DNA of 64,000 bases from Vitrella brassicaformis CCMP3155 (Eukaryota; Protista; Chromerida): contig CDMY01000485.1 in the NCBI GenBank assembly GCA_001179505.1, positions 3,974 to 67,973 of the forward strand. The letters are read 5' to 3'. This document shows positions 13,947 to 35,427 of this stretch, piece after piece. The translations under genes and the position numbers were made by a program. Under the pieces are notes generated by a model, which worked only from the letters and a program-made list of their open reading frames with translations, was not told where the DNA came from and searched no databases. The stretch's first letter is position 1. Each line of letters opens with the position of its first letter.

Positions 13947-15027
13947 CGATGGCAAGCTCGCAGAGGCCTCCCCCTTCCCCTTCGGAGCTGGAGGCATCCC
14001 AAGCATCAGGTGGTCAGAGAGCCTCAGATCAGCCGACGAAGAAGTAGATCTGAGTGAGATCTTCATCGATGAATGTGTGTGTCCCCTGTGTTGGTCAGGC
14101 CGGCAGGGCACCACCGTCATCCATCCATCCGTCAGCATCAGCGCCAACCAAACAAGCCGCGTAGACCGGCCAGCGACGCACAGGCACGCCATGAGGCTGC
14201 AGCCCGGCCAGAAGAAAGACACTCAGTGGTGTCTTGCTGCGTATTCCTGTCTGTGACTTGAAGAGGCCATGACTGACGGAGTGGTTGACGTGGGCATCTT
14301 CAAGTGCGGCCGCAACGTGCTGGAGGACTTGTCCCGCCCCGGCGAGCACTTCTACGAGCTGAACGCGCTTGTGCCAGACCGCGACAAGGAGCGCATCTAT
14401 CTGCCCATCGACCTCTGCCGCACCAGCGTCAATTAGGGATGAGCCAGTCGCATAGAAAGTCGCCACACGTGTGTCACAATGCTCTGATGTGTGTCCAGCT
14501 TCTACACCAAGGACAGGAATGGCCGCAAGTCACTGCTGCCACGCGGAGTACTGCCCAGCGACAAGTGAGCGGCGTGCAATACACCAGTAGACAAGGCGCA
14601 TTCATCGTTCATTGGGATGGGTGGGGGTCTGCTGATCAGTATGGGTGTGCCCAATGGCAATGGTGCCACACTGCGGCGCCAGGAGGTGTCTTCACCAACC
14701 ACAGCCGGCCAGGGCGGCGGTGATGTGTTTACTCGGTCGCCGTCGGGTGTGTTCTATCAAGTGGTGCAGCATGGCAGTGGGCCCAAACCGACAAGTGACC
14801 AGCGCGTCAGGTACGACTACATGGGGTGGCGTGACGACTTCGACGGACAAGACGCGACAGGGGAGGGCCGTGGGCTGGTGTTATGTGTGTCTGGACAACC
14901 TGAGTGGTGGCAGGAGGTCTTCACTGACATGCGTGTGGGTGAGGTGCGGCGGGTCATCAAGCCGGCCAGACTCAGCTCCACTGGAAAGGAGGTGTACAAA
15001 GAGTATAGGCTGGTGGCCATCCTGTGA
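13942..15027 (+). pseudogene. FKBP-like family member (copy 2) with a divergent non-BTB N-terminus; reading frame could not be joined, possible pseudogene
   Basis: The FKBP-like exon at 14720-15027 is clear and homologous to the other copies. The upstream coding-biased block 14265-14436 (MTDGVVDVGIFKCGRNVLEDL...LVPDRDKERIYLPID) ends in TAG without a phase-compatible GT donor. Confidence 0.5.
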
Positions 15028-15898
15028 GCACTGTCTCCTGGTGTGCTCCGTGTGCGTCTGTGGCGGTGAGGCACCATGCATCCAGCTGTCGTTTCGGATT
15101 TTTGTAGCCAGCTGGTTGGTCGTGTCTATGGCGGTATGGTGTGTGCGCGCCTTGGCTGCTGCGTACATCCACAAAAAACATCCATAATCCATGCATCAGT
15201 GCATTGGCTGTGGTGTAGTCGCTTTATCTTTTGGCGACCGATGGAGGTGCCGCTACAATGACTGAGAAGCCGGCTGGTTCGGTCATCCAGCAGTACTGTC
15301 TACCTGTCAGTGAGTTTCCGTTTATTGAGTGCATGTGTGCATAGTGGGGAGATGCATGGCGAGGATTTTGATGATTTCAATCAATCGATGAACGGGTGCG
15401 TCACACCACACACTGACGAGTCAGCCAGCCGAAGACCATACATGCATCGTGACAGCTGGACATCCGGTGAGTCAGAGTCACTCTGAGAGCCGTGCGCTGG
15501 CGTTCATGTGGGGTGGTGGGCAGAGTGGTGCGCAGAGCAATGTCTGTAGGTGTTCTGGCCTGGCCAGCTAGACACAGCTGGCTGCTTTTTCTTGACAAAC
15601 CTCTCTGTGTTGTTAACTGACTGGGTTCAGCATCTCATGGGTGCACACGTAGACGGTACTATTATATGTCAGATCAGCGTGATTAATACGAACATCAGCT
15701 CACCAAGTCTCTATATTCGCGTGAGACCCAATATATAACATTAACACAGCATGACGAATAAAAGGGGAATCAGACGTCCATGCAGAAGAGAAGGCCACGC
15801 AGCACGCACACGAGAATGACAACGGAGACACCGTCCCGCAGCAGGTGGCCATGAGAAAACTCATGTGTGCCAAAAAATGACAGGCCCCCGACATACAC

Positions 15899-17528
15899 TC
15901 ACAGGATGGCCTTGAGACTATACTCGCGGTATGCCCCCCCCCAAAAGGCTAGTGTGGCCGGCAGGATGACCCGCCGCACCTCCCCCACACGCATGTCAGT
16001 GAAGACCTCCTGCCACCACTTCTCCCGATCAGACACACGACCCTCCCACCCACGATTCTCGCCTTTCTTGTCTCGTCCGTCAAAGTCGTCACGCCAGTGG
16101 ATGTAGTCGTACCAGACGCACTGGTTGCGTGTCGGTTTGGGCCCACTGCCCTGCTGCACCACTCGGAAGTGCGCACCAGACGGCAACCGAATGAACACAT
16201 CACCGCCGCTGCCCTGGCCATGCGGAGAGCTGCGAAGAGGAAGAGAGGGAGCCAATCATAACGTCGCCGATCACTTCTCCCTTCCGTCTCACCTGTGCGT
16301 GTCGATGCCGTACATGGCGGCCGTCTTGTTGAAGGACTCCTGCTTGGCCACGCCGTCCAGCTGGAGTGGCGCCTTGACACCCTCACCAATCAGCAGCTGT
16401 GTGTCGGTGAGTGAGGCAGCGTGTCGTTTGCGGCGGTAGTAGTCCACCAGACGGCGGACGTGGTCGACAGGCACATCCTCAACGGGAGACGGCCACCTGA
16501 TCGACGACAACACACATACCATATGCCCGTGTTGTTGTGTGCTCTCCTGATGCTCACATATCGAATCGGTTGCGCAGCCCGATGTCGCCCATCTGGTCTA
16601 GAGTGTACTGCACCGTCGAGACGAACATTCCGCACACATCGACCGACCGGATGGGATCGCCGCCACTCAGAGGCGCCAGGAAGGGCGTGACGGCCTGATG
16701 TGCAGACCAACAGACAGACAGACAGACGCACTCATGGACAGCCTGCAGTGCTTCGGTTGTCCTGATTTCTCTTACTCACCTTGATTTCGATCATCGCCTG
16801 GTCGTATACCGCCTTCTTGGCCGCCCGGTCCCTGTCGAGCTCCTTCTTCTTTGCTGTGAAGGTCTTGATGAACTTCTCCACCTCGGCCACGACCCCTCTC
16901 AGTTCTGGCAGCACCCCCTGTGACGGCAGGGTCGGCTCTTTGGAGTTCTTTGGTGTGGCTGCAGATGCGTCAGTGGGCGACTTGTCGATGGGCGACAGGA
17001 GCAGTGCCGTCCAAAAGTCATGAAGACCTGGGCGCAATACACACACACACACATACACACACATACACACACAAATGCAGGAGACCATGAGTGGTTGCTT
17101 CGCGCTTCATGACCTTGATAGTTGCGCTTCTTCGCATCGTCCACCAGGTGGTCAACCGAGTCCTCCCCGCCCAGCAGGTCCTCGAGCATCGCCTCAAACG
17201 CACGCGGACACACATCGATGAAGATGCGGTTGTCTGCATCACGACCCAGCCGCCCATCCCATCGGCCACCGAGCAGCACCGCCAGCAGGGAGCCCTTGCT
17301 GCTCGTCAGGTGCTTCCGACGAACACAGCACACACTCCCGCCGACGTTGAGCAGCAGCAGGTCATCACCAGAGGCCGCCGAGCCGTCAGACGCGCCGTGG
17401 TCGCTCAGCAGCCTGCCGACGTTGTAAGTCGATGCGATCTCTGCGCGCTCTGCCTCGAGGCTCTCCATTGGGCCGAGGATCTGCCTGTCCAGTCGGCAGA
17501 GGGCCTCATGGCGAGTGAAGGGCTCCAT
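15899..17528 (-). CDS. BTB - coiled coil - BTB-like - FKBP-like protein, copy 3 (divergent, apparently intact)
   Basis: LLLLNVGGSVCCVRRKHLTSSKGSLLAVLLGGRWDGRL...IFIDVCPRAF, then LHDFW, AVTPFLAPLSGGDPIRSV, WPSPVEDVPVDHVRRLVDYYRRKR and an FKBP-like exon ending AIL*. Exon positions match the other copies. Confidence 0.85.
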
Positions 17529-17821: not shown

Positions 17822-19421
17822 ATGGATGGCGATTTCAGCGTGCCGGCGATGCAGCTTCAGCTGCAGGGGCCATTGACGGCCATCAGCGACGCCATCGGCA
17901 ACCCGCATGGGCAGATCCGCCAAGCCGACGACGACGCCCATCGAGAGAGGCAGAAACACGGCGCCTCCGACCCGTCAAGCGCATCGCCCGATGACGAGCT
18001 GATGTTGAGTGTGGGCGGCGTCGAGTGGCATGTGAGCCGCAAGCACCTGACGGAGGGCGACGGCGTGGAGGGCACTCTGCTGGCGGCGCTGTTCTCGGGC
18101 TGCTGGGACGGCCGGCTGAGGAAGGACGACAAGCAGAGAGTGTTCGTGGACGTTTGCCCAGAGGCCTTCAAGGCCATCCACAAGGCCATCCTCGACGCCG
18201 TCACCCTTCGCAGTGCGGGCAAGACGGTGTCGGTCGGTCACCTGCTGGGTGAGGCCACCAAGCGGGACTACAGAGGTGAGCAGAGGCACAGAGGTCAGCT
18301 ACGCTTCTATTGGGCTGTGTGATGAAGGTTCGCATGACTTCTGGGTCAAGCTGCTGCTGTCGCCGCTCGACAAAGCGGCCTCAGACGCCCCTCCAAGGGC
18401 CGATGGCGAGCCCTCCATATCGGCCACTGACAGCCCCGCCGAGAGTGACGACACTGTCAAGACGGTGGAAGCCATAGTCAAGGCGTTCGCCGCTGAGAGA
18501 GCCCGGCTGAAGGGGCTGCTGGCGTCCGCGAGGCGACGATACACAAACCTCGACAACGAGATCAAGGTGACACACACGATGGGACGAGAGGAGCTACTCA
18601 TCTGGTGCGCCCTGTTTGTGTGTCTGTGTGCGACCAGGCCGTCACGCCATTCCTGGCACCTCTGAGTGGCGAGGATCCCATTCGGTCAGTGAGGGTCTGC
18701 GGCCACGCCATCGCCACCACACAGTCCACCGTCGACGAAATGAACGACAAGCTCAAACATCGCTTCGACATGTCAGCCACACACGGACAGCCTGACAATG
18801 ACAGAGATGCACACCGATGGCTGCCCGTGTGTGTGTGTGTGTAGGTGGCCGCGGCCCGTCGAGGTGGTGCAGCCCGACCACATCGGCCATATGGTCGACC
18901 ACTACCGCCGCAAACGGCTCGGCGCGTCGGCGGCCGACATGGCTGCGTCGCTGACGATGGCCAGTGCGACAGAACAGGCAGCCTTGAACATCAACGCGGC
19001 CATGTACGGCGTCGAGACAGACATAGTCATCTCAGACACCAGGTGGACAGATCGAGGGCAGCAACAGGCCGGGCTGGTGTCGCCATCTGTCGTCTTGTTT
19101 GCCTTTGAAGTGGCGATGTCTTCACGCAGATGCCGTCTAGAGTGCGGTACAAGATCGTGCAGCAAGGGGGCGGACCCAAACCGACACGTGACCAGAGGAT
19201 CAAAGTACGACTGGCTTCAGTGGCGTGATGACTTCGACGGACAAGACAAGAAATGCGAGGACCGTGGGCGGGAGTATCTTGTGTCTGGGTTTGATTATTG
19301 GGCCCAAAAGGTCCTCACTGACATGCGTGTGGGGGAGGTGCGGCGGGTCATCGTGCCGGCCGGAGTGAGTTACAGCAGAAAGGAGCTGTACATGGAGTAT
19401 AGTCTCTTGGCCATTCTGTGA
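17822..19421 (+). pseudogene. BTB-FKBP-like copy 4 with a +1 frameshift in the FKBP-like exon
   Basis: Exon series matches the other copies. At about 19200 it reads AGGATCAAAGTAC where copy 1 reads AGGATCAAGTAC, giving a premature TGA near 19226. This could also be a consensus error. Confidence 0.75.
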
Positions 19422-19850
19422 GCACTGCCTCCTAGTGCGTCATTGGAAAGAAGGCCATCCTGTGAGTGTTCGTCGGGGACGGGCGGTCAGTGCCGTGTAC
19501 GTGTGGCGGTGTGTCCCTTTGTACGTTTTTTGCATGCTTACGGGGGCTGCTAAGTGATGTGTGTTGGGTACCTTTGGCGCGAAGGGTATTTCTCTGTGTG
19601 CCTGATGTGTGTGGCGAGCAAGTGATGAGACCTGTTTTATTGCAAGCGCACGATGACCGGTGCAGATGCCTTTTATCCAATGGTGTGTGGTGTGACAAAC
19701 CATCACGGATGCCAACACGCTTGACTGAGATCGTGACCCCCACCGCATCAGACCCAGAGAGCAAGACAGATGCAAACACATACGTCAAGGACACACAGCG
19801 ACCGACTTGTGACTGGTCGACCCAGCAGTCCATGCCAACGAACTCAACCC

Positions 19851-22313
19851 TCACTCTTCACTGCAATCTTCAAAGGCTACGCGCTGCCCCTCGGCATCGC
19901 GAGACCTCGCCTCCACACACAGGTCCTTGAGTCGTCTAGCGGCTTTCTCGGCCTCATCCCAGCCGACTTCCTCCACGGGATCTCGGTTGGCCTGGTGCTC
20001 CGTGGTGATAGTGGCGAGGGCTCCGTCAAGCGTTTTCTCTACGCCGGCGCGCTTCGTGAGGATCTCCTGCGTGGATTGGTTGCACTTGGGGCTCATGAAT
20101 GCCAGATGGCTGAGCACTAGTGCCACAAACCTGCACAGAGACAGACAGACACACAGACAGACAGACAGACAGACAGACAAGCAGGCAGAGACATGCGATC
20201 GTGCACACAGCTTTTCGCGTCTCACTTTATGAGGCCTGTGTGTGTGGGATGCTCCTCCATGGCCGAGATCAATAGCTCTATACCCTGTCAGTGTCTCAAG
20301 CAGGGATAAGTAAGGCTACCTACTGCATGCCTCTCATTCCTGACCTCACCTCATTCTCGATGATTTTGTGGTGACCAAGATCGACCCTGATGCACAAACT
20401 GCGTGCACACAGAGACACGACCCCACAATAATATGATGCGCCTCGAGGGCGGCATAAGGGATGAGTGGCCGTGTTGTCCGTCTGTCTGCCTCAAGGTGAG
20501 TCTACCTACCAGTATAAGAGTTGGGCGACTGCGTTGCACACCTTGCCGTCCTCGACAAATCTCCTCAGCCCAGTGAGGACCCTGACCAGCCCGTCGTCCT
20601 TCAGCAGCTTGGCACGCAGAGTCGAATCATTGGCCGAGATGGCTGCAATCGCATGGCAGCCCAACCCAAAGACGTCCTTGTCGTTCTGATGCACACGCAT
20701 GGCCTCCATTATGTGACCTATCAGTCAAGGGTGAGACAGGAAAGAAACTCAGTGTGATTGGGTGCAATTGATCAGGCAGGCGCAACATGTACGTCTCGTT
20801 ACCGAGAGCCAGCTTGTTGTCGAGGCTCTGGACGCCGTCCTCCTCAAGCCCGATGATGGACAGCAGCTTTGACAAGCTCTGTTGGACCTTCGGGTCATGC
20901 TTGTGGAACCCCACTAGCTCCAGCATGAAGCTCAGATCTTTTCGAAAACTCACTCGGGTCACGTGCCGGCGATTCGCCCTACTCTTGAAGCACATTCTGA
21001 GCCGACGGACAGACAGACAGACAGACGTGACCTCCTGTCTGTCTAACTGATGCCATGCTCACGTACTTGGCGATCGCAAGTAGGCATAGATGGACCACTC
21101 GACCGCTCACCACACCATATTTTCGCGCCACTTCAGCGATTGCGGGAAAACACACGCCCAGCTCTGGTCATAGAGAGCACAAGACATGATGTTAGCAAAC
21201 AGGCGTCTTCGTGAGACGCCTCGCACCTTCAGCTTTTGGGCCATTCGTCGAGGCCTCGATGATCTTCTTGAGAGCCGACTCAATGATGGGAAAGTCTCGG
21301 TCAAGGTCTCCTGTGTGGCAGAGACGTTCATGCAGAGGAAAGCATTTGTGTGTCTCTCTTTTGCTGCTGGTCGGTACCTGTGAGGCTTCTGAGGTTGGCC
21401 ATGATTGCGTTTGGCAGTTGGATGTTGTCAATGTCCATCTCATCTAGCTTGGATGCTGTAGCGCAAGCCGCTCTAACATGCGACTGTTCCTGACAGACCA
21501 CCGTAGGCAGGCAACAAGGGGCAGAGCATCGCAAATGAGACACATCCTCTACATCGATCGATCAATCGCTTCCAAGACTGCCTGAATCACCACATTGGCG
21601 CTGCGATGACCCATTGTGGTTGATGAGCTCGCCTCCTGACGCTTCAAAGTTGTACCGTTGCTGTGATAGAACAGACGCAGGTGACAGAGTGTGAGCACAT
21701 GTACTCTCTCTCTCTCTCCAACTCACCTATGGGTATCTGCAAAAACGATGATCTTGTCTTTCGCAGAGGCCGGCAGGGAGCGCAGTTCGCCGTCTACTAC
21801 TGTGGCATATCCTCCATGGCCGTCAGCATACACTGGGCAGCCGTCCAGCAGACCAACCGCCCGAGACCGCCTGTCGGGCTCCTGCACAAAACAAACACAC
21901 AACCATGGTTCGTTGACCTGTCTTCCCCTCTGTATCGGTGTGTGGTCAGTCACCTCTGCCAGACAGCCTCCCGACGGCATCCTTGCGTCCGAGAGGCTCT
22001 CGGTGTCAACGGGCGGCCGGCCCGGCCCGCCACTGCCCCGATGGACGATTCGCTGCATCCCGCCAACCAATCAGAAAGTGAGACCTGCACGCACCGCAGG
22101 ATGACACGACATCCCACATGAATCAGATTCAGAGCGGTGCCGTGCCTGTGTCTGATCTGAATCATCTGACCGTCTGTCGGTGGGCCGTGTGCGGGATCTG
22201 GTGGTTTCAGAGGAGGGGGCCTGCATGAAATACACACAGATATGAAAGGACCTCGTCGGATCAGCGGTTGCCGTCACCCTTTGCCCACCTGTTCTTCCCT
22301 CGGCAGGTTTCAC
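19851..22313 (-). CDS. Armadillo/HEAT-like helical repeat protein, multi-exon
   Basis: Exons join in frame with ARM-like repeats: ELGVCFPAIAEVARKY, FMLELVGFHKHDPKVQQSLSKLL, IMEAMRVHQNDKDVFGLGCHAIAAIS, GLVRVLTGLRRFVEDGKVC and GIELLISAMEEHP. Stop at 19851. The 5' exons and start are uncertain. Confidence 0.6.
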
Positions 22314-22471
22314 CTGCGAGCTGAGACGCCCACTGGCGGCGAGCTGAGAAAAACTCTCTCCAAAAGCACCAGATCATCCGAGGCACTGAAAGGTACGAGA
22401 GAAATGCACACACTCATGAGACTTATCAACTGCTGTGTTTGTTGTATTGTGTCAGATCTCCCCGCTCTGGC

Positions 22472-23584
22472 ATGTACAGCGACGTCAGGAAGCTGGTGGC
22501 CGACGCCCAAGCCGCCATCGGCCATCAAACCGAGGTGCCAGGCAGCGACGCCAGTGCGGCCTCCAAGCTGGTGCTCTTTCACTCGCCGACGTCGGTCTGC
22601 AGTGAGAAGTGTCGCACGGTGCTCTTCGAGCTCAACCTGCCCTTCACTTCCCACGCAGTCAACATCCTGGCTCACGACAACTATCACCCAGCGTATGTGG
22701 CCCTGCGTGTGGCGGCTTGGCAGCAGAGTGGCCTTCCCATGGCCGGCGAGAGCGACTATGAGTGGACGGGCAGCAGCAGCGTGGCGGCCAACGGCGTGGA
22801 CTGCTGCGTGGTGCCCACCTTAGTGGATATGAGGGGCGACGGCGAACCCAAGATCGTCATCGACTCATCGGCCATCTGCGAGCACCTGATGGCCGGCACC
22901 GGCCTCCTGCCGGCCGACCCACACAAGGCGGCGATTATAGAGAAGCACATCAAGCTGGTGGACGAAGTGCCCCACCCCGCGCTGCTGTATGAAGGCAATT
23001 CCGTGCACGACAACCGCCCCTGGTTCGCCAAGGTCATGATCGGCAAGGCACACTCCGGGCAGATCGCCGCACTCAAGAAGCGCCTCGCCGAGAAGGGCAA
23101 GACATGGGATGACCCACTGCTGGAAAGGGCCTACAAGGCCAAGGTCAACAAGACCAAGAAGGGGCTGGCCGCGCCGTCCAAGCCGACATACCTCACAGCA
23201 GCTGTGGACAAGACGATGAGTGTGCTCAAGGAGCTGGAAGCCGACCTGGCGGCACACGACGCAGATGGCGGCAGCAGCTATGTCTCCGGCGACAGCATCA
23301 CTGCGGCAGATCTGTTCCAAGCCGTCAATCTGCACCGCCTGCTGCTGCTGGGCAACAGCTGGATGTGGCAGGACCTGCCCCATGTGGCAGCATTCGCCGA
23401 CCGGATGCTGTCGCGGCCGTCGATCCAGAAGGCCGTGATCACCTACCCCGGCATGATCCCCTCACGGCCGACAGCCGACCTCATCACGAAGGATCAAGGC
23501 TTCATCGCTGGCTTCATCCACGGCAGACGCGTCGATTTCCTCAACAGCCTCGTGTTTGTCATGCGACTTATCGGCATGGCTTAA
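22472..23584 (+). CDS. Glutathione S-transferase, LinD (2,5-dichlorohydroquinone reductive dechlorinase)-like; CDS has no introns
   Basis: A single 370-aa ORF with a GST-N fold (LFHSPTSVCSEKCRTVL...VVPTLVD...IDSSAICEHL) and GST-C (ADLFQAVNLHRL...PHVAAFADRMLSRPS). The upstream intron at about 22393-22456 appears to lie in the 5' UTR. Confidence 0.9.
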   Translation: MYSDVRKLVADAQAAIGHQTEVPGSDASAASKLVLFHSPTSVCSEKCRTVLFELNLPFTSHAVNILAHDNYHPAYVALRVAAWQQSGLPMAGESDYEWTGSSSVAANGVDCCVVPTLVDMRGDGEPKIVIDSSAICEHLMAGTGLLPADPHKAAIIEKHIKLVDEVPHPALLYEGNSVHDNRPWFAKVMIGKAHSGQIAALKKRLAEKGKTWDDPLLERAYKAKVNKTKKGLAAPSKPTYLTAAVDKTMSVLKELEADLAAHDADGGSSYVSGDSITAADLFQAVNLHRLLLLGNSWMWQDLPHVAAFADRMLSRPSIQKAVITYPGMIPSRPTADLITKDQGFIAGFIHGRRVDFLNSLVFVMRLIGMA

Positions 23585-24418
23585 GATGGGGTCTGCCCTC
23601 CTTTGGCATCACGTGCACGAGCTCCGAGAGGGTGCTCTGTAGGTGATTGACAGGGCGGAGGTGCGTTGTGGATGTATGTATGTGTGTGGAGTGAGGGAGA
23701 TTTACTGTGTTTTGCTGTCTCTCAGTGGCTCATCCGATCGACGAAGGGCAAAGGAGTGCTCTTGCTGCATGCAGAAGCCAGCACATAGATGCCTGGCTGG
23801 CGTGGAGGATTGTCTGCCTGTCTGACTGTACGACGCGGTTTTTGTAGATGGAAGGGCAGTCATTTGGAGTCAGTTTGGATGTGTGAGGGCTCTGCCGCTT
23901 GCTTGAGAGTGTGTGTGGCGACACTTTCTGATTCCGTCGACACACTTGTCTGCCGTAAACAATCCTTCCGACCAGCAGCAGGTTTATGACTATGAATATG
24001 AATGGCGCCGAAAAGGTGCTCTGTGATTGACTAGGTCGTGTGTGAAGGCGGCAAGGGATGTGGTGTGTTAGGGTGTGAAGTTGACTCCGAACAGTCAATG
24101 TACATCGTATGTGTTTGCATCTGTCTTGCTCTCTGGGTCTGATGCGGTGGGGCTGACGCTCTCAGTCAAGTGTCCATCCATCAATGGTTTCTCCCACCAC
24201 ACACCATTGGATAAAAGGCATCTGCACCGGTCATCGTGCGCTTGCAATAAAACAGGTCTCATCACTTGCTCGCCACACATCTCAGGCACACAGAGAAATG
24301 CCCTTCACGCCAAAGGTACCCAACACACATCACTAAGCAGTCCGTCAGCATGCAAAAACGTACGAAGGGACACACCGCCACACGCACACGGCACTGACCG
24401 CCCGTCCCCGACGAACAC

Positions 24419-26065
24419 TCACAGGATGGCTAAGAGCCTGTACTCGATGTACAGGTCCTTTCCAGTGGAGCTGAGTCTGCCCGGCTTGATGACCCGCCGC
24501 ACCTCACCCACACGCATGTCAGTGACGACCTCCTGCCACCACTCAGCAAACCCAGACACACATAAGACCCGCCCACGGTCCTCGCCTATCTTGTCTTGTC
24601 CGTCGAAGTCGTCACGCCACTGGATGAAGTCATACTTGACGCGCTGGCCACGGGTCGGTTTTGGTCCACTGCCATGCTGCACGACTTGATGGAAGACACC
24701 CGACGGCAACCGAACAAACATCCGCTGCGTGAGGCCATCGCCACTGCAATGGTAAACAGGACGACAGATGGCGACACCAGCCCGGCCTGTTGCTGCCCTC
24801 GAACTGCACACCTGGTGTCTGAGATGACTATGTCTGTCTCGACGCCGTACATGGCCGCGTTGATGTTGAAGGCTACCTGCTCAGTCTCACTGGCCATTGT
24901 CAGCACCACAGCCATGTCGGCCGCCGACGCGCCGAGCCGTTTGCGGCGGTAGTGGTCGACCATACGGCCGATGTGGTCGGGCTGCACCACCTCGACGGGC
25001 CGAGGCCACCTACACACAAAGGCACACACACGCACACACAGGCAGCCATCGGTGGGTATCTCTGTCATTGTCAGGCTGTTCATGTGTGGCTGACATATCG
25101 AAGCGGTTATTGAGCTTGTCGTTCATTTCGTCGACGGTGGACTGTGTGGTGGCGATGGCGTGGCCGCAGACCCTCACTGACCGAATGGGATCCTCGCCAC
25201 TCAGAGGCGCCAGGAATGGCGTGACGGCCTGGTCGCACACAGACACACAAACAGGGCGCAACAGATGAACAGCTCCCCTCTCTCCCCCCATCCTGTGTGT
25301 CACCTTGATCTCGTTGTCGAGGTTTGTGTATCGTCGCTTGGCGGCCTCCAGCTGCCCCTCCAGCCGGGCCGTCTCTGTGTTGGCTGCCCTCACGATGGCC
25401 TCCACGGCGCTGACCAGGGACCCACTGTGGGCGGGAAGGCTCTCGGCCGATATGTTGGGCTCGCCATCGGCAGTCGGAGGGGCGTCTGAGGCCGCTTTGT
25501 CGAGCGGCGACAGCAGCAGCTTGACCCAGAAGTCATGCAAACCTGCACCACACAGCCCAATAGAAGCGTAGCTGACCTCGCGGCGCCTCTGCTCACCTCT
25601 GTAGTCCCGCTTGGTGGCCTCATGCAGCAGGTGGCCGACCGACGCCGCCCTGCCTGCGCTGCGAAGCGTCACGGCGTCGAGGATTGCCTTGTGGATGGCC
25701 TTAAAGGCCTCTGGGCAAACGTCCACGAAGATCCTCTGCTTGTCGTCCTTCCTCAGCCGGCCGTCCCAGCAGCCCGAGAACAGCGCCGCCAGCAGAGTGC
25801 CCTCCACGCTGTCGCCCTCCGTCATGTGCTTGCGGCTCACATGACACTCGACGCCGCCCACACTCAGTGTCAGCTCGTCATCGGGCGATGCGCTTGACGG
25901 GTCGGAGGCGCCGTGTTTCTGCCTCTCTCGATGGGCGGCATCGTCGGCTTGGCGGATCTGGGCATGCAGCTGGCCGATGGCGTCGCCGATGGCGGTGACA
26001 GGCACGTGCAGCCTATCGAGAATCGCAATGGCGCTGAACTTGCGAGCGGCCAAGTCGGCGTCCAT
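24419..26065 (-). CDS. BTB - coiled coil - BTB-like - FKBP-like protein, copy 5 (apparently intact)
   Basis: Starts MDADLAARKF. BTB ELTLSVGGVECHVSRKH...LFSGCWDGRL. Same exon structure as copies 4 and 6. FKBP-like exon ends AIL* at 24419. Confidence 0.88.
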
Positions 26066-26479
26066 CGTCGCTGCTCAACAGATCTCTCAGACCTCTCTGT
26101 GGTGAGCACCTGAATGTCACACAGACAAACGGGATGAATAGATCTTGTTCTTGTTGACTGCTGTGTCACACCCTTGCCTCACCTGATGACATCAGGGCGT
26201 CAGATGATGCCAAGATCTCCTCCGTGCCTCCCTTCTTCAAAAGTCTGAGCTTGCAGGACGCGTGGGAAGGGACGGACGTGGATGTTCACAGCGGGGCCCG
26301 CGGCAGAGGTGTCGTTGCAGGACGACACAGCTTGGGTTCAGGAGCGCGGGATGGATGTATGGATGACTGAATTGATGCCCTTTCCGCCGTATGACGTCGG
26401 CATGGCATCGGATGCGATGTACTTATGGATGCCTCAGGCAGAGGATGATCAGTCGGCCCAGACCACACCATCGGGCACC

Positions 26480-29042
26480 ATGATTAGCAAGGTAAGTAAG
26501 AGAGATCTGGGTCGGAATATGACCCCATGAGTGATCAACAGGTTTGCTGGTGTGCTGTGGTGTGCGTTGTTTGATGCAGTTGTGTACTGACGCTAGTTTG
26601 TTGCGCGAGGGCCTCCAGAGGCTGCAGAGGGACGCACAGCAGAGCCGTGAGGCGTGCCAGCGAGATGGCGGCGGGGTGGCCGAGGCGTTGCTCTCGTCTG
26701 TGGTGTCACAAGTGTCCGTTGCTGAGGCCTCGATGGCCGGTGCAATGGACTCCCTCACCGCAACGGCGGCCATAGCCCTCCCGCAGCCAATGGACGACGT
26801 CAGTGCGTCCGCTGCTGCTGCTGCTGCTGCTGCTGTGGCCATGGAAGCGCCGCCCGAAGAGCCCAATGCTGAGGTCCGGAGGGAGGGATGAATGCGGGGT
26901 GGCATCTGTTCATTTCTGTGCTGTTGCTGTGTTGCTGGCTGGTGCAGAGTAGTGCTGTGGTAGAGGAGGAGGAGGCCGCCCCGACGCCATCGTTTCGCCT
27001 GGTCCACACGTCGGGGAAACCGCCGCCGAACAGTGGACCGGTAAAAGCAAGACAACAAAGACCGCCCATACGTGCACGACCCTGTCGACCTCTGTGTGTG
27101 AATGTGTGTCTTGTACAGCCGTCCCTTCGCCTCTCCCCCGATGAGCTGGCGTGTGTGTTCGGCTTCTACCAGCCCTCAGAGCTGACGCGCGTCGCCACCA
27201 CGATCGGCAAGACGGTCTTCGGCTGGGCGGCCAAGCGATACACCCACCTGACCATCGACGGCTCGGACAAGGGCGGCGTGCGCCAGCAGTGGGAGCGAAT
27301 GCCCCTGGAGGTGGCACACCGGTGGGGCCAGCGGGCCACCAACCTCACACACCTGCACGTCATCTACAAGAACCAAGCCAGCCGCTGGTGCCGTGGGACC
27401 TGGGTGGCGCTGATCGACGGCAATGCAGCGGCCAGGAAGGCCATGAGCCGCGAGAGGGAGGGGCAGTGCGGGGCAGCGGCAGCAGCCAGAGGGCCGGACA
27501 GGCCATCCGCGGCGTCATCCATCAAGGTGCTCAGCTTCGAGGAGGACAGCGACGGAGAACCATACGATGAGGGTGAGGACGTCTCGTCCGCCCCCCTGCC
27601 CCCGTCCCCCTTGCCCGTCGACCTGTCGGTCCTCGAGGAGGTGCACGACATGCCATACGCCTGTGCGGCCGTCCGCATGGGCGACCGCGTGTGGCAGACG
27701 CCATCCATGCGGGTCATGACGCTCAAGCAGGACGAGTGCGATGCTGAGGCCGTGATGGCAAAGTGGATGGCGTCGTGCGAGCATTTGGAGGTGTTTGACG
27801 ACGGAAGCATCTTCGAGATCACGACAGAGCTGCTGACCATGCCGCCCCCCGGCACCTCCCTCGTCCGCCTGCGGTCCATGGGCACCCTCAACCTGGACAC
27901 CGTCGGCACCATCAATCCAGGTCGGGTGGCCGACCTGCGGCAGGCCCTTGTGGCGCGGGGATGTCACATGTCCCTCCGCGAGCTGCCCATTGAGGCCACC
28001 GAGATCACGGCTGAGCACAAGGGGCTGCTGCGGGAGGTGCCGTCGCTGTCGGCGGCAGTGCTGCAGCCGGAGGCCCTCAGCCAGCCGCAGGTGGTCAAGA
28101 AGGCAGACAATCTCGAGATGGAGCTGGAGCTCATCGAGTGGATGGCCGAAGAAGCGCCTCAGGTAGCCAAGACACCACGGGCTGCTGCGCCTCAACACCT
28201 TCAGGCACAATTATCCCCAATGCGGTCTGTCTGTGTGCCTGCAGGTGCAGAAGCTCGTTCGAGAGTTTGCCGCTGTCACCGATGTGGTCTTCTACAAGAA
28301 CGAGCTCACCGACCCCAACGCCGCCGGACACGCGGCCGCATATTTCCCCCGCGCCACCACATTCCGCTGCAATGCGGGACAGCTGCCGCCGCGGGTGCGG
28401 AGCGGCTTGGCCAAGACGGTCGCCAACATGCCCCAGTGCAACACCATCGAATTCGTGGATAATCTCGAGGCGCACCAGGAAGCGCCGAAGAATGCTGTGG
28501 CCTTCCTGGAGTCACTCAAGAGGCACATGGCCACAGGGAAGGGGCCGGGGGCCGGGGAGGGGGGCGATAGCACCGAGGGGGCGACGGAGCGGAGCCTGTC
28601 AGTGCAGATTGAGGTGTCGGCGAATGGCATCTTGCACCACAGCCGGCCGCTGCAGAAGTGGGCGAGCCACGACCTGCCGGCCATCGACGAGGTCACCGTC
28701 TTTGTGATGGGTAAGCACAGTGGGTAAGCAGGGCCACACGAGGTAGACAGCCCACCTGAGCAGCACACACATCACAAGCTTTATGTGTGTTGGCTGCTGT
28801 GTGCAGACGGGCTAGAAGAGGACGACTCGATGGAGGCCTTGTACGGCTCGGTGATGGCGTCGCTCGTCGGCATCATGTCGCGACCCGGTGTGAGCAAGGC
28901 GTCCATTGTCTTCCTGAGTCTTCACGACCTTGGCCATATGAGGCGGCTGTTCCAGTCGCAGCTCGCATGGTTCAACCTGCTGGACACACCATACACCATC
29001 ACCATGGAGGAGGTCACCATCACCGTCGAGACGCGCACGTAG
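26480..29042 (+). CDS. Uncharacterised F-box-like protein, copy A (multi-exon)
   Basis: In-frame exons MISK / LCTDASLL... / SSAVVEEE... / PSLRLSPDELACVFGFYQPSELTRV (F-box-like) ... / VQKLVREF... / DGLEEDD...ITVETRT*. It has a paralogue at 35016-37632. The F-box call is weak. Confidence 0.7.
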
Positions 29043-30479
29043 ACGATACCACAGCTGGTGAAAGGGAACGAACAGGGCGGACAGAGAGGGCACGTGTGTG
29101 CATCTACTTGGTCGTCTGTTATGTTTGTGTGTGCGGTTTCAGGTAGCCGTAGACATCGGCAGCCTGACTGCTGTTGGGGCATTGGTGGCTGCGGGCGGGG
29201 CGGAGGGGAAAACAGCCGATCGAATCTCTGTTGTTGATTGTGGATAGACACTAAAGGATAAATGGACGGATGGATGGATGGGGATATGTGTTGCGTGCAG
29301 CGGCTGTCAATGAGTGTGTGAGACCAACTGCTGGAATAACATGAATCCGTGTGTATACATAAGCTGGGTCCGCATCGGCCTCATCGACTTCACTCCCCAC
29401 TCCCGCTGGCCCCTTGCATGATGCACGTGACATGAGATCGTCAGCCATTATTCGAACACACACATGTGGTTCTTGTGCTGTCCTTATGTGTGGTATTATG
29501 TCAGGTGTGTGTGCTATGCGGAGCGGTGCTTTCTCGCTCGCCTCGAGACACTGGCCAAACACATGATCTTCCTCAGGATAAGATGGACGCACTCTCGTAT
29601 CGCATCGCCGCTGTGCGGCTGTTTGTCTTATCGGTCGCTAGGGTCGGGCCCGAGCAACACGGCAGCGACATACTCACCAGTGTCACCACCATCAAACCGT
29701 CAGACGCTGCGGACCGGGTGAGGTACACCGCAGCGTGTCTGAATACGTACACCGACAATGTCTGTCTGCCTCTTTGCAGATTTGTGGCATTGGTGCTCAA
29801 CCAGCAAGGGCACCAGGTGGCTGTGGTGATGGGCTCAGGAGGGCGGCCTGAGTCGCGTGTGCCGAGTGTGCTGTGTCTCAAGTTGCGAGACTGACTGACT
29901 GACTAACCTATGGGTCTTGAGTGTGTGATCTTCCACTCACGCACAGCCACTGTTGTTCATTCGTCCGTATATGACAGACATACAGTAGATAGCCATTCAT
30001 GAGCTGACTGACTGAGGACCGAGGATCTGATGACACTGTATCTGTGAGCTTGAGGGGTTGCGCTCTTAAGGTGTATTCAGCAATGTGGCCATTCAGGCAG
30101 GCAGATCGAAAGAGAAGAGACATATCGCGAGGAGACTTGCGAAATCGGCACATCGAGCAGGGGGCGGCAATTGTGGGCTGGGCGTCTCGCGCCAGGGCAC
30201 CCCGTGGGGCGAAGATGTGGGGTTTGCTGCACACGCAGCGCAGCCCCCGTGTGCAGGGCCAGGACGGCGGCAGTGTGAGAGACTGCCCCAGTGGTGTTGA
30301 TGAGACGTGCTACATCCAGCTGCCGAGAGTCGACGAGGGCGACGCTGCCGCACAGCAGGCCATGATCCACCACACACAGACAGACCATCCCAAGGTCACC
30401 CTGCAATGCCCTTGTGGCACAGTGGCCAGCGGAGGCCTCTGACGAGTGGCGTCTGTGTGCGTCTGTCTGTCCACTGCAG

Positions 30480-32246
30480 ATGGCGTCGGCCTCGAGTGAG
30501 CACATTCCTCTGCTGCTGGACGATGGCCAAGGGCTGACGGAGCCCCAGCTGCCCGACGTCACCGATGACATCACCAAGGCACCGAGACGCTTCGAGCAGG
30601 TGGGTTGGTGTCAGTCGACTCTGAGGCCTCTAGGACGTCTGTGTGTCGTCTGCAGGTCCCCTTGGTGGGCGCCCCGGCCGCCGACAATTGGTATCCGACA
30701 GATGCACTGAGACGCAGCATCAGATGGGCCATCGACGACAAGGATGCGGAGGGCCTGCGGAAGGTCCTCGACGGTCTGTCGCCTGAGCAAACCGAGAAAG
30801 TGCTGACGACTGGATGGGAATATGGGAGCTCTGCCATCCACTACGCCGCACGTAGGCATCGTCGCACCACTGCACACACATGATGCAGCTGAGTGGCCCC
30901 TGTGTGTGCTTCTCAGTCAAGTGTACGGATGTGGCGGTGTTTGAGGTGCTGCTGCACAACCGACACGACCTGCTTTACCTGAAAGATAAGGTGTCGTGCT
31001 GGACCATTACACTCATTCCGCTCATTAGCCGGCCGATATCTTTCTTCTGTGTCTGTAGGAGGGCGACACGCCTCTTCACAAGGCAGCACAGAAAGGGTCA
31101 GTTGGTTTGTGGAGCAGTCTGTCGAGTGGGGCGGAGAGGAGCTGCTGGAAGCTCGGACCAACGTTAGGACGAGGGAAATCTCGACTGGTGCATCGAACAG
31201 CAAGCGTCTTCTGTCATGCTGTGATTCAGATTGGCTGGAAGATTGGCTGGACGCCTCTTCATGATGCAGCATGTCAGTCACTCCTGCAAATGATAGCCAC
31301 ACAACTACATGAGTCTTCAACGTGTCTCTCCTGCAGTCTCGGGCCATGCCGATGTGGTGGCGGTGATGTTGAAGGTGGACCCACAGCTCTTGAAAATCAA
31401 AACCAGCGTAGGCTGCCCGCACCAATCGACTCTGGTACCTCAACTGTCCCCGCCCGCTAATGTGACAGGAGGGAAAGACGCCTTTCGATTTTGCCCTCAG
31501 AAAGCCGAAAGTCGTCGCTGTGATGGCTGTCGTGGCTGGAGACGTGGCCATGAAGCTGCTCGAGCAAGGCGCGAAAATGGAAGAACTGGACGCCCATGAT
31601 CTCAAGGAGGTGGTGCCTTTCACGAAGGGGTTCCTGAAGGACCGCTCTGATTCGCTGGGCCTCGACAGCCTTCGCTTGTGTGCCTTCTTCCGCAAGCTGA
31701 TGCAGGCACGACAGAAGGACTCCCTCACAGAGTGCGATTGAATGGAGAGGAGGGGACATCATGCGAACATCTGCATGCTTCTTCGTCTCTCTCTCTCCTC
31801 TCTTTTCTTTTTCGTTCTTCGTGCAGTGACTTTGAGAATATTTCCAACTGGCAGGAGGTAAACAGTAAGGACACACACAGTCTTACTTGTCGCATTGATT
31901 GGGGGGTACGATCCGGGTCAGGCACTCACAGCGACTTTCTGCAGCGATACCAGGATGCAAAACTTTGAACAGTCACTTAGAGGCAAAGAGAAAGAATGGT
32001 TCGCGGCGCTCGAGTCTGCGGAGCCCCTCACAGTAGTGACTCAAGGTAGCCAACACAGAGACTTCACCCCCTTTTGGCTGTCGGCCGCTCATGGCGTCGT
32101 CCTTCTGCCAATGATTGTGACAGCCAACTCCATCTCTCTCGTCACAAAGCATTGGCAGCCGCCACCAGTTTTCAGGATAGGCTGCTTTTGCCGGTCGATT
32201 GATTTTGGACCCCGTGATGTCTTCATTACCCGCGTGCTGTCAATGC
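30480..32246 (+). pseudogene. Ankyrin-TRP channel copy A: frameshifted and truncated before the pore
   Basis: Ankyrin exons are homologous to copies B and C. There is a 1-nt deletion near 31107 (GTTGGTTTGTGGAG versus GTTGGTGTTGTGGAG). The first TM exon breaks at 32246 and runs straight into sequence that is the 3' flank of the intact copies. Confidence 0.85.
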
Positions 32247-33066
32247 GAGTGCATGTGTGTGGATCGGCAGAAACCAGTGAGTCCGTGGTTGGTTGCGTCT
32301 GGTGGATGTCTGTCTGTGTTAGGCCAATGGCACGGCAAAGCATAGCATAGCATAGCGTCATATCGGTCCCCAGCGCTCTTATCGTCCAGCCCCACGGGCG
32401 TCGCTCTCTCTCTTCAGATTCGCTCACAGTCAGTCAGTCCGCTACAGAAAAAAAGGAGGCGCAGGTACACAGCTCACCTCACCCCTCACACAGCAGCTCA
32501 CACCACACCATAGCATAGCAGAGTCAGTATGGCACACACACATGGAGGTCCCATGCACCACACGCAGCACAACACAGCACCACCGGCGAGAAAGTACAGT
32601 GGATCAACCGCACCACGTCGTCAACAAGACACCACTCACCCACCAGTCCCCCTGACCCAGCAGCCCAACCCCATCCCACATCACCCCGACCATGGCCCCA
32701 CTCGCCGTGCCGCCCCCCACTGCAGATTCGGGGCGGCACGGCGCACAGCAGTGAGTGCACGGCAGGCAGACACGTACGTGAGAGCCTCGCCCACACACAT
32801 TTCGCTGAGCATCCCCTGGACACGCATTTCATCAGCATGCCTGGTACATGAATTTAGCTGATTTCGAGGTCAGTCATCTGCACTGATCGTGCGCTTGCAA
32901 TAAAGCAGGTCTCATCAATCGCTCGCCACACGTACACAAAAGGCACACAGAGGTGTGCGTTCACGCCCAAGGTACCCAGCACACATCACTTAACAGCACA
33001 CTACCATGCCACGGGAGAGTAGAATCCCGGCCCCGACAAACACTCACGCGAGGGAGGAGAGAGAGC

Positions 33067-34671
33067 TCACAGGATGGCCAAGAGCCTATACTCGATATAC
33101 AGCTCCTTTCCCACACGCACGATGCATCGCCGCACCTCACCCACACGCATATCAGTGACGACCTCCCGGGCCCACTCGGCCCGATCAGACACACGAACCT
33201 CCCGCCCACGGTCCTCGCCTATCTTGTCTTGTCCGTCGAAGCCGTCACGCCAGTGGATGTAGTCATACTTGACGGTCTGGTTGCGTGTTGGTTTGGGCCC
33301 ACTGCCCTGCTGCACAATCTTGTACCGCACTCCAGACGGCATCTGCGTGAAGCCATCGCCACTGCAAAGGCAAAAAAGACGACAGATGGCGACACCAGCC
33401 CGGCCTGTTGCTGCCCTCGATCTGTCCACCTGGTGTCTGAGATGACTATGTCTGTCTCGACGCCGTACATGGCGGCGTTGATGCCGAAGGCCGCCTGCTC
33501 AGTCTCACTGGCCATTGTCAGCACGACAGCCGTGTCGGCCGCCGACGCGCCGAGCCGTTTGCGGCGGTAGTGGTCGACCATACGGCCGATGTGGTCGGGC
33601 TGCACCACCTCGACGGGCCGCGGCCACCTACACACACGCAGGCACACAGGCAGCCATCGGTGTGCATCTCTGTCATTGTCAGGCTGTCCATGTGTGGCTG
33701 ACATGTCGAAGCGGTTTTTGAGCTTGTCGTTCATTTCGTCGACGGTGGACTGTGTGGTGGCGATGGCGTGGCCGCAGACCCTCACTGACCGAATGGGATC
33801 GTCGCCACTCAGAGGTGCCAGGAATGGCGTGACGGCCTGGTCCCACACAGACAGGCACACAAACAGGGCGCATCAGATGAATAGCTCCTCTCCCCCCATC
33901 GTGTGTGTCACCTTGATCTCGTTGTCGAGGTTTGTGTCTCGTCGCTTGGCGGCCTCCAGCTGCCCCTCCAGCCGGGCCGTCTCGGTGTTGGCTGCCCGCA
34001 CGATGGCCTCCACGGCGCTGACCAGGGACTCACTGTGGGCGGGAAGGCTCTCGGCCGCTATGGTGGGCTCGCCATCGGCCCTTGGAGGGGCGTCTGAGGC
34101 CGCTTTGTCGAGCGGCGACAGCAGCAGCTTGACCCAGAAGTCATGCAAACCTGCACCACACAGCCCAATAGAAGCGTAGCTGACCTCTGTGCCTCTGCTC
34201 ACCTCTGTGGTCCCGCTTGGTGGCCTCATCCAGCAGGTGACCGACCGACGCCGTCTTGCCCGCACTGCGAAGGGTCACGGCGTCGAGGATGGCCTTGTGG
34301 ATGGCCTTGAAGGCCTCAGGGCAAACGTCCACGAAGATCCTCTGCTTGTCGTCCTTCCTCAGCCGGCCGTCCCAGCAGCCCGAGAACAGCGCCGCCAGCA
34401 GAGTGCCCTCCACGCCGTCGCCCTCCGTCAGGTGCTTGCGGCTCACGTGCCACTCGACGCCGCCCACACTCAGTGTCAGCTCGTCATCGGGCGATGCCCT
34501 TGACGGGTCGGAGGCGCCGTGTTTCTGCCTCTCTCGCTGGGCGTCGTGGTCGGCTTGGCGGATCTGCCCATGCAGGTGGCCGATGGCGTCGCTGATGGCG
34601 GTGACAGGCACGTGCAGCCGATCGAGAATCGCAATGGCGCTGAACTTGCGAGCGGCCAAGTCGGCGTCCAT
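33067..34671 (-). CDS. BTB - coiled coil - BTB-like - FKBP-like protein, copy 6 (apparently intact)
   Basis: Nearly identical to copy 5 through the BTB exons. FKBP-like exon MPSGVRYKIVQQGSGPKPTRNQ...EYRLLAIL* ends at 33067. Confidence 0.88.

Positions 34672-35396: not shown

Positions 35397-35427
<31 letters not shown>

What the first reader, a model, noticed from the sequence alone, without database searches (positions are those of the whole stretch)
14720..33350. Hypervariable, mosaic FKBP pocket on a conserved BTB scaffold
Seen: copies 4-6 are nearly identical in their BTB exons, but the FKBP-like domains vary at three discrete patches between invariant blocks (GPKPT, WRDxFDG, TDMRVGEVRR). 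Patch 1 reads YDIVDW/YDYMGW/YDYIHW/YDWLQW/YDFIQW/YDYIHW. Patch 2 reads EYHVSSAVEW/VLCVSGQPEW/EGRVSDREKW/EYLVSGFDYW/VLCVSGFAEW/EVRVSDRAEW. Patch 3, the flap, differs in length in each copy. The patches are shuffled: copy 5 shares VLCVSG, RLSSTGK and VFxQVVQHG with copy 2, while copy 6 shares PTRNQ, YDYIHW and RVSDR with copy 3, although their N-termini match copy 4. By alignment to FKBP12 these patches border the ligand pocket. Inference: diversifying selection plus gene conversion generate a repertoire of binding specificities, as in immune-like receptor families.
Basis: partly seen in the sequence, partly recalled or inferred. Interest (0 to 1): 0.78.

Follow-up and report, generated by a model that had tools for sequence, protein, structure and literature searches.

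The report
Shuffled, fast-evolving FKBP-like pocket exon
In the alga Vitrella, a cluster of genes ends in a small FKBP-shaped domain whose former enzyme pocket is reshuffled between gene copies and changes faster than neutral DNA, which suggests a family of proteins built to grab many different targets.

Summary
The window (Vitrella brassicaformis, contig C485) has six FKBP-like last exons. The quoted patch strings are exact.

Corrections:
- The flap has three length classes, not six.
- Copy 2 is not on a BTB scaffold. It belongs to a gene of about 200 aa with a different N-terminus.
- Copy 4's FKBP exon has a +1 frameshift.

- Copies 4-6 come from a recent segmental duplication. Their 5' exons, introns and 3' flank are 90-97% identical (dS 0.09-0.17).
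- The FKBP exon is an island of old divergence (dS 0.37-0.51). It is a mosaic of tracts that match copies 1, 2 and 3.
- PHI p is 0.0015. AU tests reject the copy 4/5/6 clade on this exon (p 0.002).
- Old exon ends survive just past the stop codons of copies 4 and 6.
- My own M1a/M2a code gives LRT 43-152 even with separate trees per segment. About 20% of codons have omega 2.4-3.3, enriched at FKBP12 pocket positions (P 3e-4).
- The same code finds nothing in the BTB part (omega 0.24, LRT 0).
- Tree-free pairwise tests show only omega about 1 in the patches.

A role as a ubiquitin-ligase adaptor is inferred, not shown. This scan already reported the same cassette family on other contigs (s1-205476, s1-231046).

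The parts
1..1527 (+). Copy 1 (c1): a BTB / coiled-coil / BTB-like / FKBP-like gene. Its ATG lies about 248 nt before the window start. FKBP-like last exon about 1216-1524; stop TAA at 1525-1527.
   Evidence: tblastn; exon hits; public model P0167, 473 aa.
14269..15027 (+). Copy 2 (c2): a different gene type with no BTB. Exon 1 is about 14269-14433 (55-aa N-terminal module of unknown function). A small exon is about 14500-14565. The FKBP-like last exon is about 14640-15024; stop at 15025-15027.
   Evidence: P0009 (202 aa) aligns over its full length at 57% identity. Frame translations. Exon borders are approximate and set by homology only.
15899..17528 (-). Copy 3 (c3): BTB-FKBP-like gene. FKBP-like domain 15902-16207.
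   Evidence: Public model P0182, 444 aa. Pfam BTB_2 scores 20.3 bits, just under the cut-off.
17837..19421 (+). Copy 4 (c4): BTB-FKBP-like gene. FKBP exon 19111-19421 carries a +1 frameshift (one extra A in the run at 19202-19204), so it is probably a recent pseudogene or a truncated protein.
   Evidence: DNA alignment A2; sequence. Public model P0159 ends 31 residues into the domain.
19454..19465 (+). Relict of an older FKBP-exon end (GCCATCCTGTGA), 32 nt past c4's present stop. The 3' flank that c5 has directly after its own stop follows it.
   Evidence: 3'-flank alignment A5; flank table; sequence.
24419..26065 (-). Copy 5 (c5): an intact five-exon gene. The FKBP-like last exon is 24419-24743, entered through a phase-2 intron. 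Exon 1 (BTB) is about 25598-26065.
   Evidence: Public model P0157 (454 aa) has the same junctions.
33067..34671 (-). Copy 6 (c6): an intact five-exon gene. The FKBP-like last exon is 33067-33361. The flap is shortened by 5-6 codons. The old stop and 3' flank start about 20 nt past the present stop.
   Evidence: Public model P0158, 444 aa.
24216..31777 (.). Segmental duplication unit. 24216-31777 matches 32872-40634 at 84-89% identity. It holds c5 or c6 with its 3' flank and upstream neighbour genes. c4 with its 3' flank (17860-19784) matches the same unit.
   Evidence: blastn of the window against itself.

Best explanation
SHOWN
- The window carries five Vitrella genes with the layout KCTD-type BTB, coiled coil, second BTB-like stretch, FKBP-like domain (c1, c3-c6). 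A sixth gene (c2) has another N-terminus but the same kind of last exon.
- The FKBP-like domain sits on one last exon entered through a phase-2 intron. It belongs to a cassette family with at least 147 matches in this genome. Every named relative I looked up is from Vitrella.
- The domain keeps the FKBP fold and the F36/D37 equivalents. The 80s loop is about 9 residues shorter. The positions of Y26, R42, E54, V55, I56, W59 and F99 are hypervariable.
- c4, c5 and c6 arose by recent segmental duplication, but their FKBP exons are old and mosaic. Short tracts of about 30-130 nt match c2, c3, c1 or copies on other contigs.
- Tract ends lie just inside the exon start and at or just past the stop codon. 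Relict exon ends remain.
- About a fifth of the codons evolve with omega above 1, mostly around the former ligand pocket. The framework and the BTB part are under purifying selection.

INFERRED
- Ectopic gene conversion or cassette replacement among paralogues supplies new pocket combinations. Diversifying selection keeps them.
- The domain is probably no longer a prolyl isomerase. It probably acts as a variable binding module.
- On the BTB genes it would present targets to an oligomeric scaffold, possibly a cullin-3-type ubiquitin ligase.
For: Fold and family
- AF2 model pLDDT 94.6. Foldseek TM 0.76-0.83 to Mip/FKBP structures. phmmer E 4e-5 to 4dz3.
- At least 147 matches in the genome. Vitrella-only names among 30 looked-up clusters, apart from one weak dinoflagellate hit.
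- Gene models agree with public proteins.

Age contrast
- Among c4, c5 and c6, 5' dS is 0.085-0.166 and intron distance 0.05-0.09. FKBP framework dS is 0.37-0.51.
- Fisher tests give p 1e-5 to 8e-3.
- The 3' flanks are again conserved.

Mosaic structure
- c5 matches c2 at 42/42 and 23/24 nt in columns 74-97. It matches c6 at 60/63 in columns 34-54.
- PHI p is 0.0015; it is 0.002 or less for 31 sequences and for third positions alone.
- AU tests. Relict exon ends.
- Two genes with sister 5' parts carry FKBP exons of different subfamilies (AU p 0.0017).

Selection
- M0 omega is 0.64-0.66. My code reproduces IQ-TREE's lnL.
- M2a against M1a gives LRT 139, 152, 60 and 43. M8 against M8a gives 107.
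- A FEL-like grid finds columns 49, 55, 65, 69 and 94 positive with both tree sets.
- Pocket enrichment P 3e-4.
- 5' control: omega 0.24, LRT 0.

Scaffold and expression
- BTB profile hits Kelch13 BTB, SHKBP1 and KCTDs. Cullin genes are present.
- MMETSP transcripts exist for family members.
Against: - Neither is significantly above 1. Relaxed constraint could explain part of the signal.
- Site-model LRTs are inflated by recombination. Segment trees reduce that problem but do not remove it.
- The mosaic could in part come from short-read assembly switching paralogues inside blocks that are identical over 30-40 nt. No independent assembly or transcript of c4, c5 or c6 was found.
- c4 is broken.
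- No evidence bears on binding partners, cullin binding or loss of isomerase activity.
- The full-length model failed (pLDDT 45).
- Pocket mapping rests on a sequence alignment to a Burkholderia FKBP plus textbook FKBP12 numbering. It was not measured on coordinates.
Confidence: 0.7

Rival explanations
1. Relaxed constraint plus concerted evolution, with no diversifying selection. The FKBP-like pocket lost its function and drifts at omega about 1. The 5' parts look conserved only because they were recently duplicated or homogenised.
For: Pairwise class-level omega is about 1.0-1.2. Among c4, c5 and c6, patch omega is 0.87-0.95. The introns are as conserved as the BTB exons. Recombination is present and inflates site-model tests.
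Against: M2a beats M1a, which already allows omega = 1, with LRT 43-152 even with 4-6 separate segment trees. A FEL-like test with site-specific dS still finds pocket columns 49, 65 and 69. Selected sites cluster on pocket and flap. The same code gives LRT 0 on the 5' part, which also recombines. No stops or frame breaks occur in 30 of 31 subfamily exons.
Confidence: 0.2
2. Assembly artefact. The fine mosaic in c4, c5 and c6 arose when a short-read assembler switched between paralogues inside identical blocks such as WRDDFDG and TDMRVGEVRR.
For: Several tract borders coincide with conserved blocks of 30-42 nt. No independent contig or transcript of these three copies is on record.
Against: Relict exon ends and nested 3' flanks are structural footprints that an assembler would not invent. 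PHI is significant family-wide and on third positions. Exon swaps are also seen between whole subfamilies on other contigs. Some borders lie in variable sequence.
Confidence: 0.07
3. A decaying family of pseudogenes or selfish cassettes with no cellular role.
For: c4 is frameshifted. The family is very large, clustered and confined to one lineage. No transcript was found for c4, c5 or c6.
Against: Framework omega is 0.23-0.55, with 31 codons under significant purifying selection. Reading frames and splice junctions are intact in c1, c3, c5 and c6. Other members have complete MMETSP transcripts.
Confidence: 0.03

Closest known systems
Expanded MATH-BTB (and F-box) ubiquitin-ligase adaptor families of nematodes and grasses (e.g. 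PMC4091423, PMC6883508)
   Same: A BTB scaffold is joined to a separate target-binding domain. The families form large lineage-specific clustered expansions. The papers describe a less conserved binding domain.
   Different: Here the variable domain is an FKBP fold, not MATH. The BTB is of the KCTD/T1 type. The variable domain is a mobile last exon also found on non-BTB genes. Cullin-3 binding is untested.
TRIM5/finTRIM B30.2 variable loops, and TRIMCyp (PMC2657112, PMC3137616)
   Same: An oligomeric E3-type scaffold carries a C-terminal recognition domain diversified by duplication and positive selection in surface loops. TRIMCyp shows that a prolyl-isomerase fold (cyclophilin) can be recruited as the recognition module by exon shuffling.
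   Different: The isomerase family (FKBP) and the scaffold (BTB, not RING/B-box) differ. The organism is a chromerid alga. The pocket residues themselves are replaced. No pathogen link is known.
Canonical FKBP / Mip prolyl isomerases (PF00254; e.g. 4dz3, 1fd9)
   Same: The five-strand sheet wraps one helix. The FD motif (F36/D37) and the M-x-V-G-E/Q motif after the helix are kept.
   Different: The domain scores below the Pfam gathering score. The 80s flap is about 9 residues shorter. Three residues before F36 are deleted. Seven of 10 pocket positions are hypervariable, and F46 is replaced by a conserved Arg.
Gene-conversion-diversified multigene families (MHC; chicken Ig pseudo-V donors)
   Same: Short tracts are copied among paralogues and create mosaic binding sites under diversifying selection.
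   Different: This is germline evolution only. There is no sign of programmed or somatic conversion, and no dedicated silent donor array was shown. The tandem arrays seem to be spliced into multi-domain proteins.

Membership tests
FKBP-type domain (PF00254) | FKBP fold (five-stranded sheet around a short helix) | tested here: met
   AF2 pLDDT 94.6. Foldseek TM 0.76-0.83 and E about 1e-7 to Mip/FKBP chains.
FKBP-type domain (PF00254) | Score at or above the Pfam gathering cut-off (21.1 bits) | tested here: not met
   The window copies score 13.4-17.1 bits or give no hit. Only the six-domain protein P0001 passes, as a sum.
FKBP-type domain (PF00254) | Conserved aromatic pocket (FKBP12 Y26, F36, D37, F46, V55, I56, W59, Y82, F99) | tested here: not met
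   F36 is kept in 29/31 and D37 in 28/31. F46 is Arg in 24/31. Y26, V55, I56, W59 and F99 each show 9-11 different residues. Mapping is by the HMMER alignment plus textbook numbering.
FKBP-type domain (PF00254) | Prolyl isomerase activity / FK506 binding | not testable with these tools
   Needs an enzyme assay.
KCTD/T1-type BTB (PF02214) | Sequence match to BTB_2 / solved T1-type BTB domains | tested here: met
   c3 scores 20.3 bits (cut-off 21.4) and paralogue P0121 25.5 bits. The family profile hits Kelch13 BTB (E 1.5e-5), SHKBP1 (4e-5), KCTD7, KCTD13-like and KCTD16. c4, c5 and c6 alone give no Pfam hit.
Cullin-3 substrate adaptors | BTB binds cullin-3 and the second domain binds the substrate | not testable with these tools
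   Cullin genes exist in the genome, but their type was not determined. Some KCTD BTBs do not bind Cul3 (general knowledge).
Adaptively evolving adaptor or receptor repertoires | Positive selection localised to the binding surface, with the scaffold under purifying selection | tested here: met
   FKBP exon: M2a LRT 43-152, omega 2.4-3.3, with pocket enrichment. 5' part: omega 0.24, LRT 0. Caveat: pairwise omega is about 1.
Gene-conversion mosaics | Statistical recombination signal and incongruent trees along the gene | tested here: met
   PHI p 0.0015. AU p 0.002-0.003. dS discontinuity p 1e-5. Relict exon ends.

The most novel reading that the evidence does not exclude
Vitrella runs a germline-encoded recognition repertoire built on a stripped FKBP fold. 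More than 100 pocket variants are shuffled by cassette gene conversion and plugged onto BTB, SET and other scaffolds. They would tag diverse, perhaps foreign (viral, bacterial or host-derived), proline-containing targets for ubiquitination. That would be an immune-like or self/non-self system of a kind not described in alveolates.
Probability: 0.15. Interest if true: 0.85.

Novelty: new variant of a known kind. Interest (0 to 1): 0.66.

Why it matters
FKBP pockets are normally among the most conserved parts of the proteome. Here the pocket is the fastest-evolving part of a domain copied more than 100 times and moved between genes as a symmetric exon.

If the products are ubiquitin-ligase adaptors, this is a new recognition fold. 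It sits beside MATH, F-box partner domains and B30.2, in the closest photosynthetic relatives of malaria parasites.

It also offers a compact natural library of FKBP-fold binders, and a clean case for studying how exon-scale gene conversion and selection interact. My searches of the held paper library found nothing on it.

Tried and rejected
- The GENECONV-like run test gave many 'significant' pairs. The runs sit mostly in conserved blocks, so rate heterogeneity confounds the test. I did not use it as evidence.
- The first FEL implementation timed out. I replaced it with a grid version.
- The full-length AF2 model of paralogue P0058, from five sequences, failed (pLDDT 45). There is therefore no model of the domain arrangement or of the second BTB-like region.
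- The protein-level AU test of the c4/c5/c6 clade was only borderline (p 0.06). The DNA test was decisive.
- A whole-exon c3+c6 clade is rejected (p 0.017). Their likeness is limited to short tracts.
- c2 as an 'orphan donor cassette' was rejected, because it has its own upstream exons.
- Tandem cassette arrays as silent donor arrays were considered unlikely. The public model P0001 splices them into one multi-FKBP protein.
The family analysis therefore uses 47 exons from about 300 kb, not all 147 or more.
I rebuilt the step from files.
- No joined spliced model was handed to any search tool. Spliced coding sequence was built only inside scripts for dN/dS. Full-length searches used public protein ids.
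- Exact look-ups of P0157 and P0158 in other assemblies found nothing.
Full report
ORGANISM AND OBJECTS

The window is G000:C485:3974-67973 of a 72.7-Mb genome in 1064 contigs. Public proteins encoded here are labelled Vitrella brassicaformis CCMP3155.

tblastn with copy 5's reading frames finds six FKBP-like units:
- c1 at 1216-1524 (+)
- c2 at 14716-15024 (+)
- c3 at 15902-16207 (-)
- c4 at 19111-19421 (+)
- c5 at 24419-24743 (-)
- c6 at 33067-33361 (-)

CHECK OF THE OBSERVATION

The alignment of the six translations (A1) reproduces every quoted patch string and the three invariant blocks.

Corrections:
- The flap has three length classes, not six.
- c1 lies outside the stated range.
- c4 has one extra A in the run at 19202-19204, which shifts the frame. 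Its public model P0159 ends there at 380 aa.
- c2 has no BTB. P0009, a 202-aa Vitrella protein, aligns over its whole length from window 14269. c2 is therefore the last exon of a different, short gene.

GENE MODEL

A DNA alignment of c4, c5 and c6 (A2) with GT-AG sites gives five exons:
- exon 1: BTB
- exon 2: coiled coil
- exons 3-4: a second BTB-like stretch
- exon 5: the FKBP-like domain, entered through a phase-2 intron

The junctions are the same as in public models P0157 (c5), P0158 (c6), P0182 (c3) and P0167 (c1).

I built the spliced coding sequence only inside scripts. No joined model went to a search tool. Full-length searches used public protein ids.

WHAT THE DOMAINS ARE

FKBP-like domain:
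- Pfam FKBP_C stays below its cut-off (13-17 bits against 21.1).
- phmmer finds Burkholderia and Legionella Mip-type FKBPs (E 4e-5).
- An AF2 model built on 47 family members has pLDDT 94.6. It matches FKBP and Mip structures at TM 0.76-0.83.

BTB domain:
- It is just under the Pfam cut-off in c3 and above it in paralogue P0121.
- A family profile hits the BTB of Kelch13, SHKBP1 and several KCTDs.
- A full-length model failed (pLDDT 45).

FAMILY

- The c5 domain has at least 147 matches in its own genome, clustered on C1000, C748 and C364.
- A profile search of 1.84 billion representatives gives 1608 hits. The top hits are single C-terminal domains or tandem domains.
- Of the 30 clusters I looked up, every cluster with an organism name is Vitrella. 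The exception is one weak hit from the dinoflagellate Apocalathium. The unnamed records come from MMETSP transcript sets and from ENA or JGI contigs.
- Partner domains include BTB, SET, CBM20 and HMG box according to UniProt names.
- This scan already reported the same cassette family on other contigs (s1-205476, s1-231046). I tested the claims independently here.

AGE CONTRAST

Among c4, c5 and c6:

| Region | Measure |
|---|---|
| 5' exons | 88-98% identical; dS 0.085-0.166 |
| Introns | 90-97% identical; distance 0.05-0.09 |
| FKBP exon, overall | about 80% identical |
| FKBP exon, framework | dS 0.37-0.51 |
| FKBP exon, patches | dS 0.43-0.48 |

- The excess of synonymous differences in the FKBP exon is significant (Fisher p 1.2e-5 for c5-c6).
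- High identity resumes in the 3' flank.
- The FKBP exon is therefore an island of old sequence inside a young segmental duplication (24216-31777 against 32872-40634).
- The 'conserved scaffold' is thus mostly a matter of recency. Pairwise omega of the 5' part among c4, c5 and c6 is 0.39-0.81.

MOSAIC STRUCTURE

- Segment by segment, c5 is c2-like in alignment columns 5-33 and 55-97, with 42/42 and 23/24 nt in columns 74-97. It is c6-like in columns 34-54 (60/63) and 101-118.
- c6 is c4-like at its start (50/54). It is c3-like in columns 21-33 and 55-73, c5-like in 34-54 and c1-like in 74-87.
- PHI gives p 0.0015 for the six copies. It gives 0.002 or less for 31 subfamily members, and the same for third codon positions alone.
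- The 5' tree has (c4,(c5,c6)) at 100/99.
- The FKBP-exon DNA tree pairs c2 with c5 (97/96). AU tests reject c4+c5+c6 (p 0.0024) and c5+c6 (p 0.003).
- At family scale, C364_31063m and C364_47548p have sister 5' parts (100/99) but FKBP exons of different subfamilies (AU p 0.0017).
- Some clades are congruent (the c1 group), so exchange is frequent but not universal.

STRUCTURAL FOOTPRINTS

- c5 and c3 are followed directly by one type of 3' flank.
- c4 and c6 carry, after their stop, 20-44 nt of a second flank type that is common in the family. The first flank type follows it. In c4 this is preceded by a relict of an exon end at 19454-19465.
- A copy on C748 shows the same nesting.
- Intron-4 ends follow the 5' clade. 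The 5' junctions therefore lie within the first few dozen bases of the exon.

SELECTION

- M0 omega for 31 exons is 0.64-0.66.
- I wrote M1a/M2a and M7/M8 code with fixed trees. It reproduces IQ-TREE's likelihood.

| Data set and trees | M2a against M1a LRT |
|---|---|
| One tree | 139 |
| Three segment trees | 152 |
| Six segment trees | 60 |
| Gap-free core, four trees | 43 |

- M8 against M8a gives an LRT of 107 with one tree.
- In these fits 17-23% of codons have omega 2.4-3.3.
- The same code on 298 codons of the 5' part of 18 genes gives omega 0.24 and LRT 0.
- A FEL-like grid with site-specific synonymous rates finds columns 49, 55, 65, 69 and 94 positive under both tree sets. It finds 31 columns negative.
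- Conservative tree-free tests are weaker. On independent pairs, omega is 1.17 for 10 pocket columns set in advance. It is 0.55 for the rest.
- My reading is that selection is real but of moderate strength, on top of relaxed constraint.

POCKET MAPPING

- I used the HMMER alignment to 4dz3 and standard FKBP12 numbering (my own knowledge).
- The equivalents of Y26, R42, E54, V55, I56, W59 and F99 are hypervariable.
- F36 and D37 are kept, and F46 is a conserved Arg.
- Six of the 14 codons with posterior above 0.9 are among these 10 columns (P 3e-4). Ten of 14 fall in pocket plus flap (P 5e-6).
- Distances were not measured on coordinates.

MECHANISM

Shown: duplication, exon-scale and sub-exon exchange among paralogues, and elevated replacement rates around the former pocket.

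Inferred: the domain is a binding module that no longer acts as an isomerase. On BTB genes it would feed targets to an oligomeric, possibly cullin-based, ligase. Cullin genes exist, but their type and any binding are untested.

LITERATURE

- Searches for Vitrella with FKBP or BTB, and for FKBP/BTB with selection terms, found nothing on this family.
- Comparators are the MATH-BTB expansions (PMC4091423, PMC6883508) and the diversified TRIM B30.2 genes and TRIMCyp (PMC2657112, PMC3137616).

LIMITS

- An assembly chimera is not excluded for c4, c5 and c6.
- No transcript was found for these three copies.

Noticed in passing
window 24419-24424, 15899-15904, 19416-19424; loci L014/L019/L021/L030 (C748:215.8-220 kb), L018/L028/L029 (C364:49-51 kb): The stop codon of the cassette overlaps a good splice donor (..CT|GTGAG..). 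The exon is also entered in phase 2, so it is a symmetric 2-2 exon. In tandem arrays spaced about 480 bp apart, the public model P0001 (788 aa, six FKBP-like units) uses that donor and reads ..LLDIW|TPVGF... The same exon can therefore end a protein or be chained.
   Followed up: partly
alignment columns 74-83 of the FKBP exon (e.g. window 24497-24526 in c5): The invariant TDMRVGEVRR block also has very low synonymous diversity (pS 0-0.2, against 0.37 overall). This suggests homogenisation, a preferred conversion junction, or constraint at the nucleotide level.
   Followed up: no
window 21606-21887 (-): A module of about 45 aa (..GLLDGC.VY.DG.GGY..) matches the N-termini of several unrelated FKBP-like Vitrella proteins (P0005, P0012, P0018, P0060, P0072). 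No FKBP exon lies downstream here.
   Followed up: no
window 26382-31777 vs 34973-40634; inverted copies at 53911-59719: The neighbour genes of c5 and c6 are duplicated with them at 83-89% identity. Further inverted copies lie at 54-60 kb without a BTB-FKBP gene. I did not check those names.
   Followed up: partly
window 22439-23584 (+): A 381-aa reading frame with no apparent intron lies between c4 and c5. I did not examine it.
   Followed up: no
A2 columns 1-150 and 691-800 (c4: window about 17837-17910 and 18440-18540): c4 differs sharply from c5 and c6 in its first 24 or so codons and in a 100-nt block of the coiled-coil exon (63% against 95% identity). The 5' part is therefore mosaic too.
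   Followed up: partly
L012 / C1000:97-98 kb; P0005: One public protein (P0005, 456 aa) chains three FKBP-like units of very different subfamilies. Cassettes of distant types can therefore sit in one gene.
   Followed up: no
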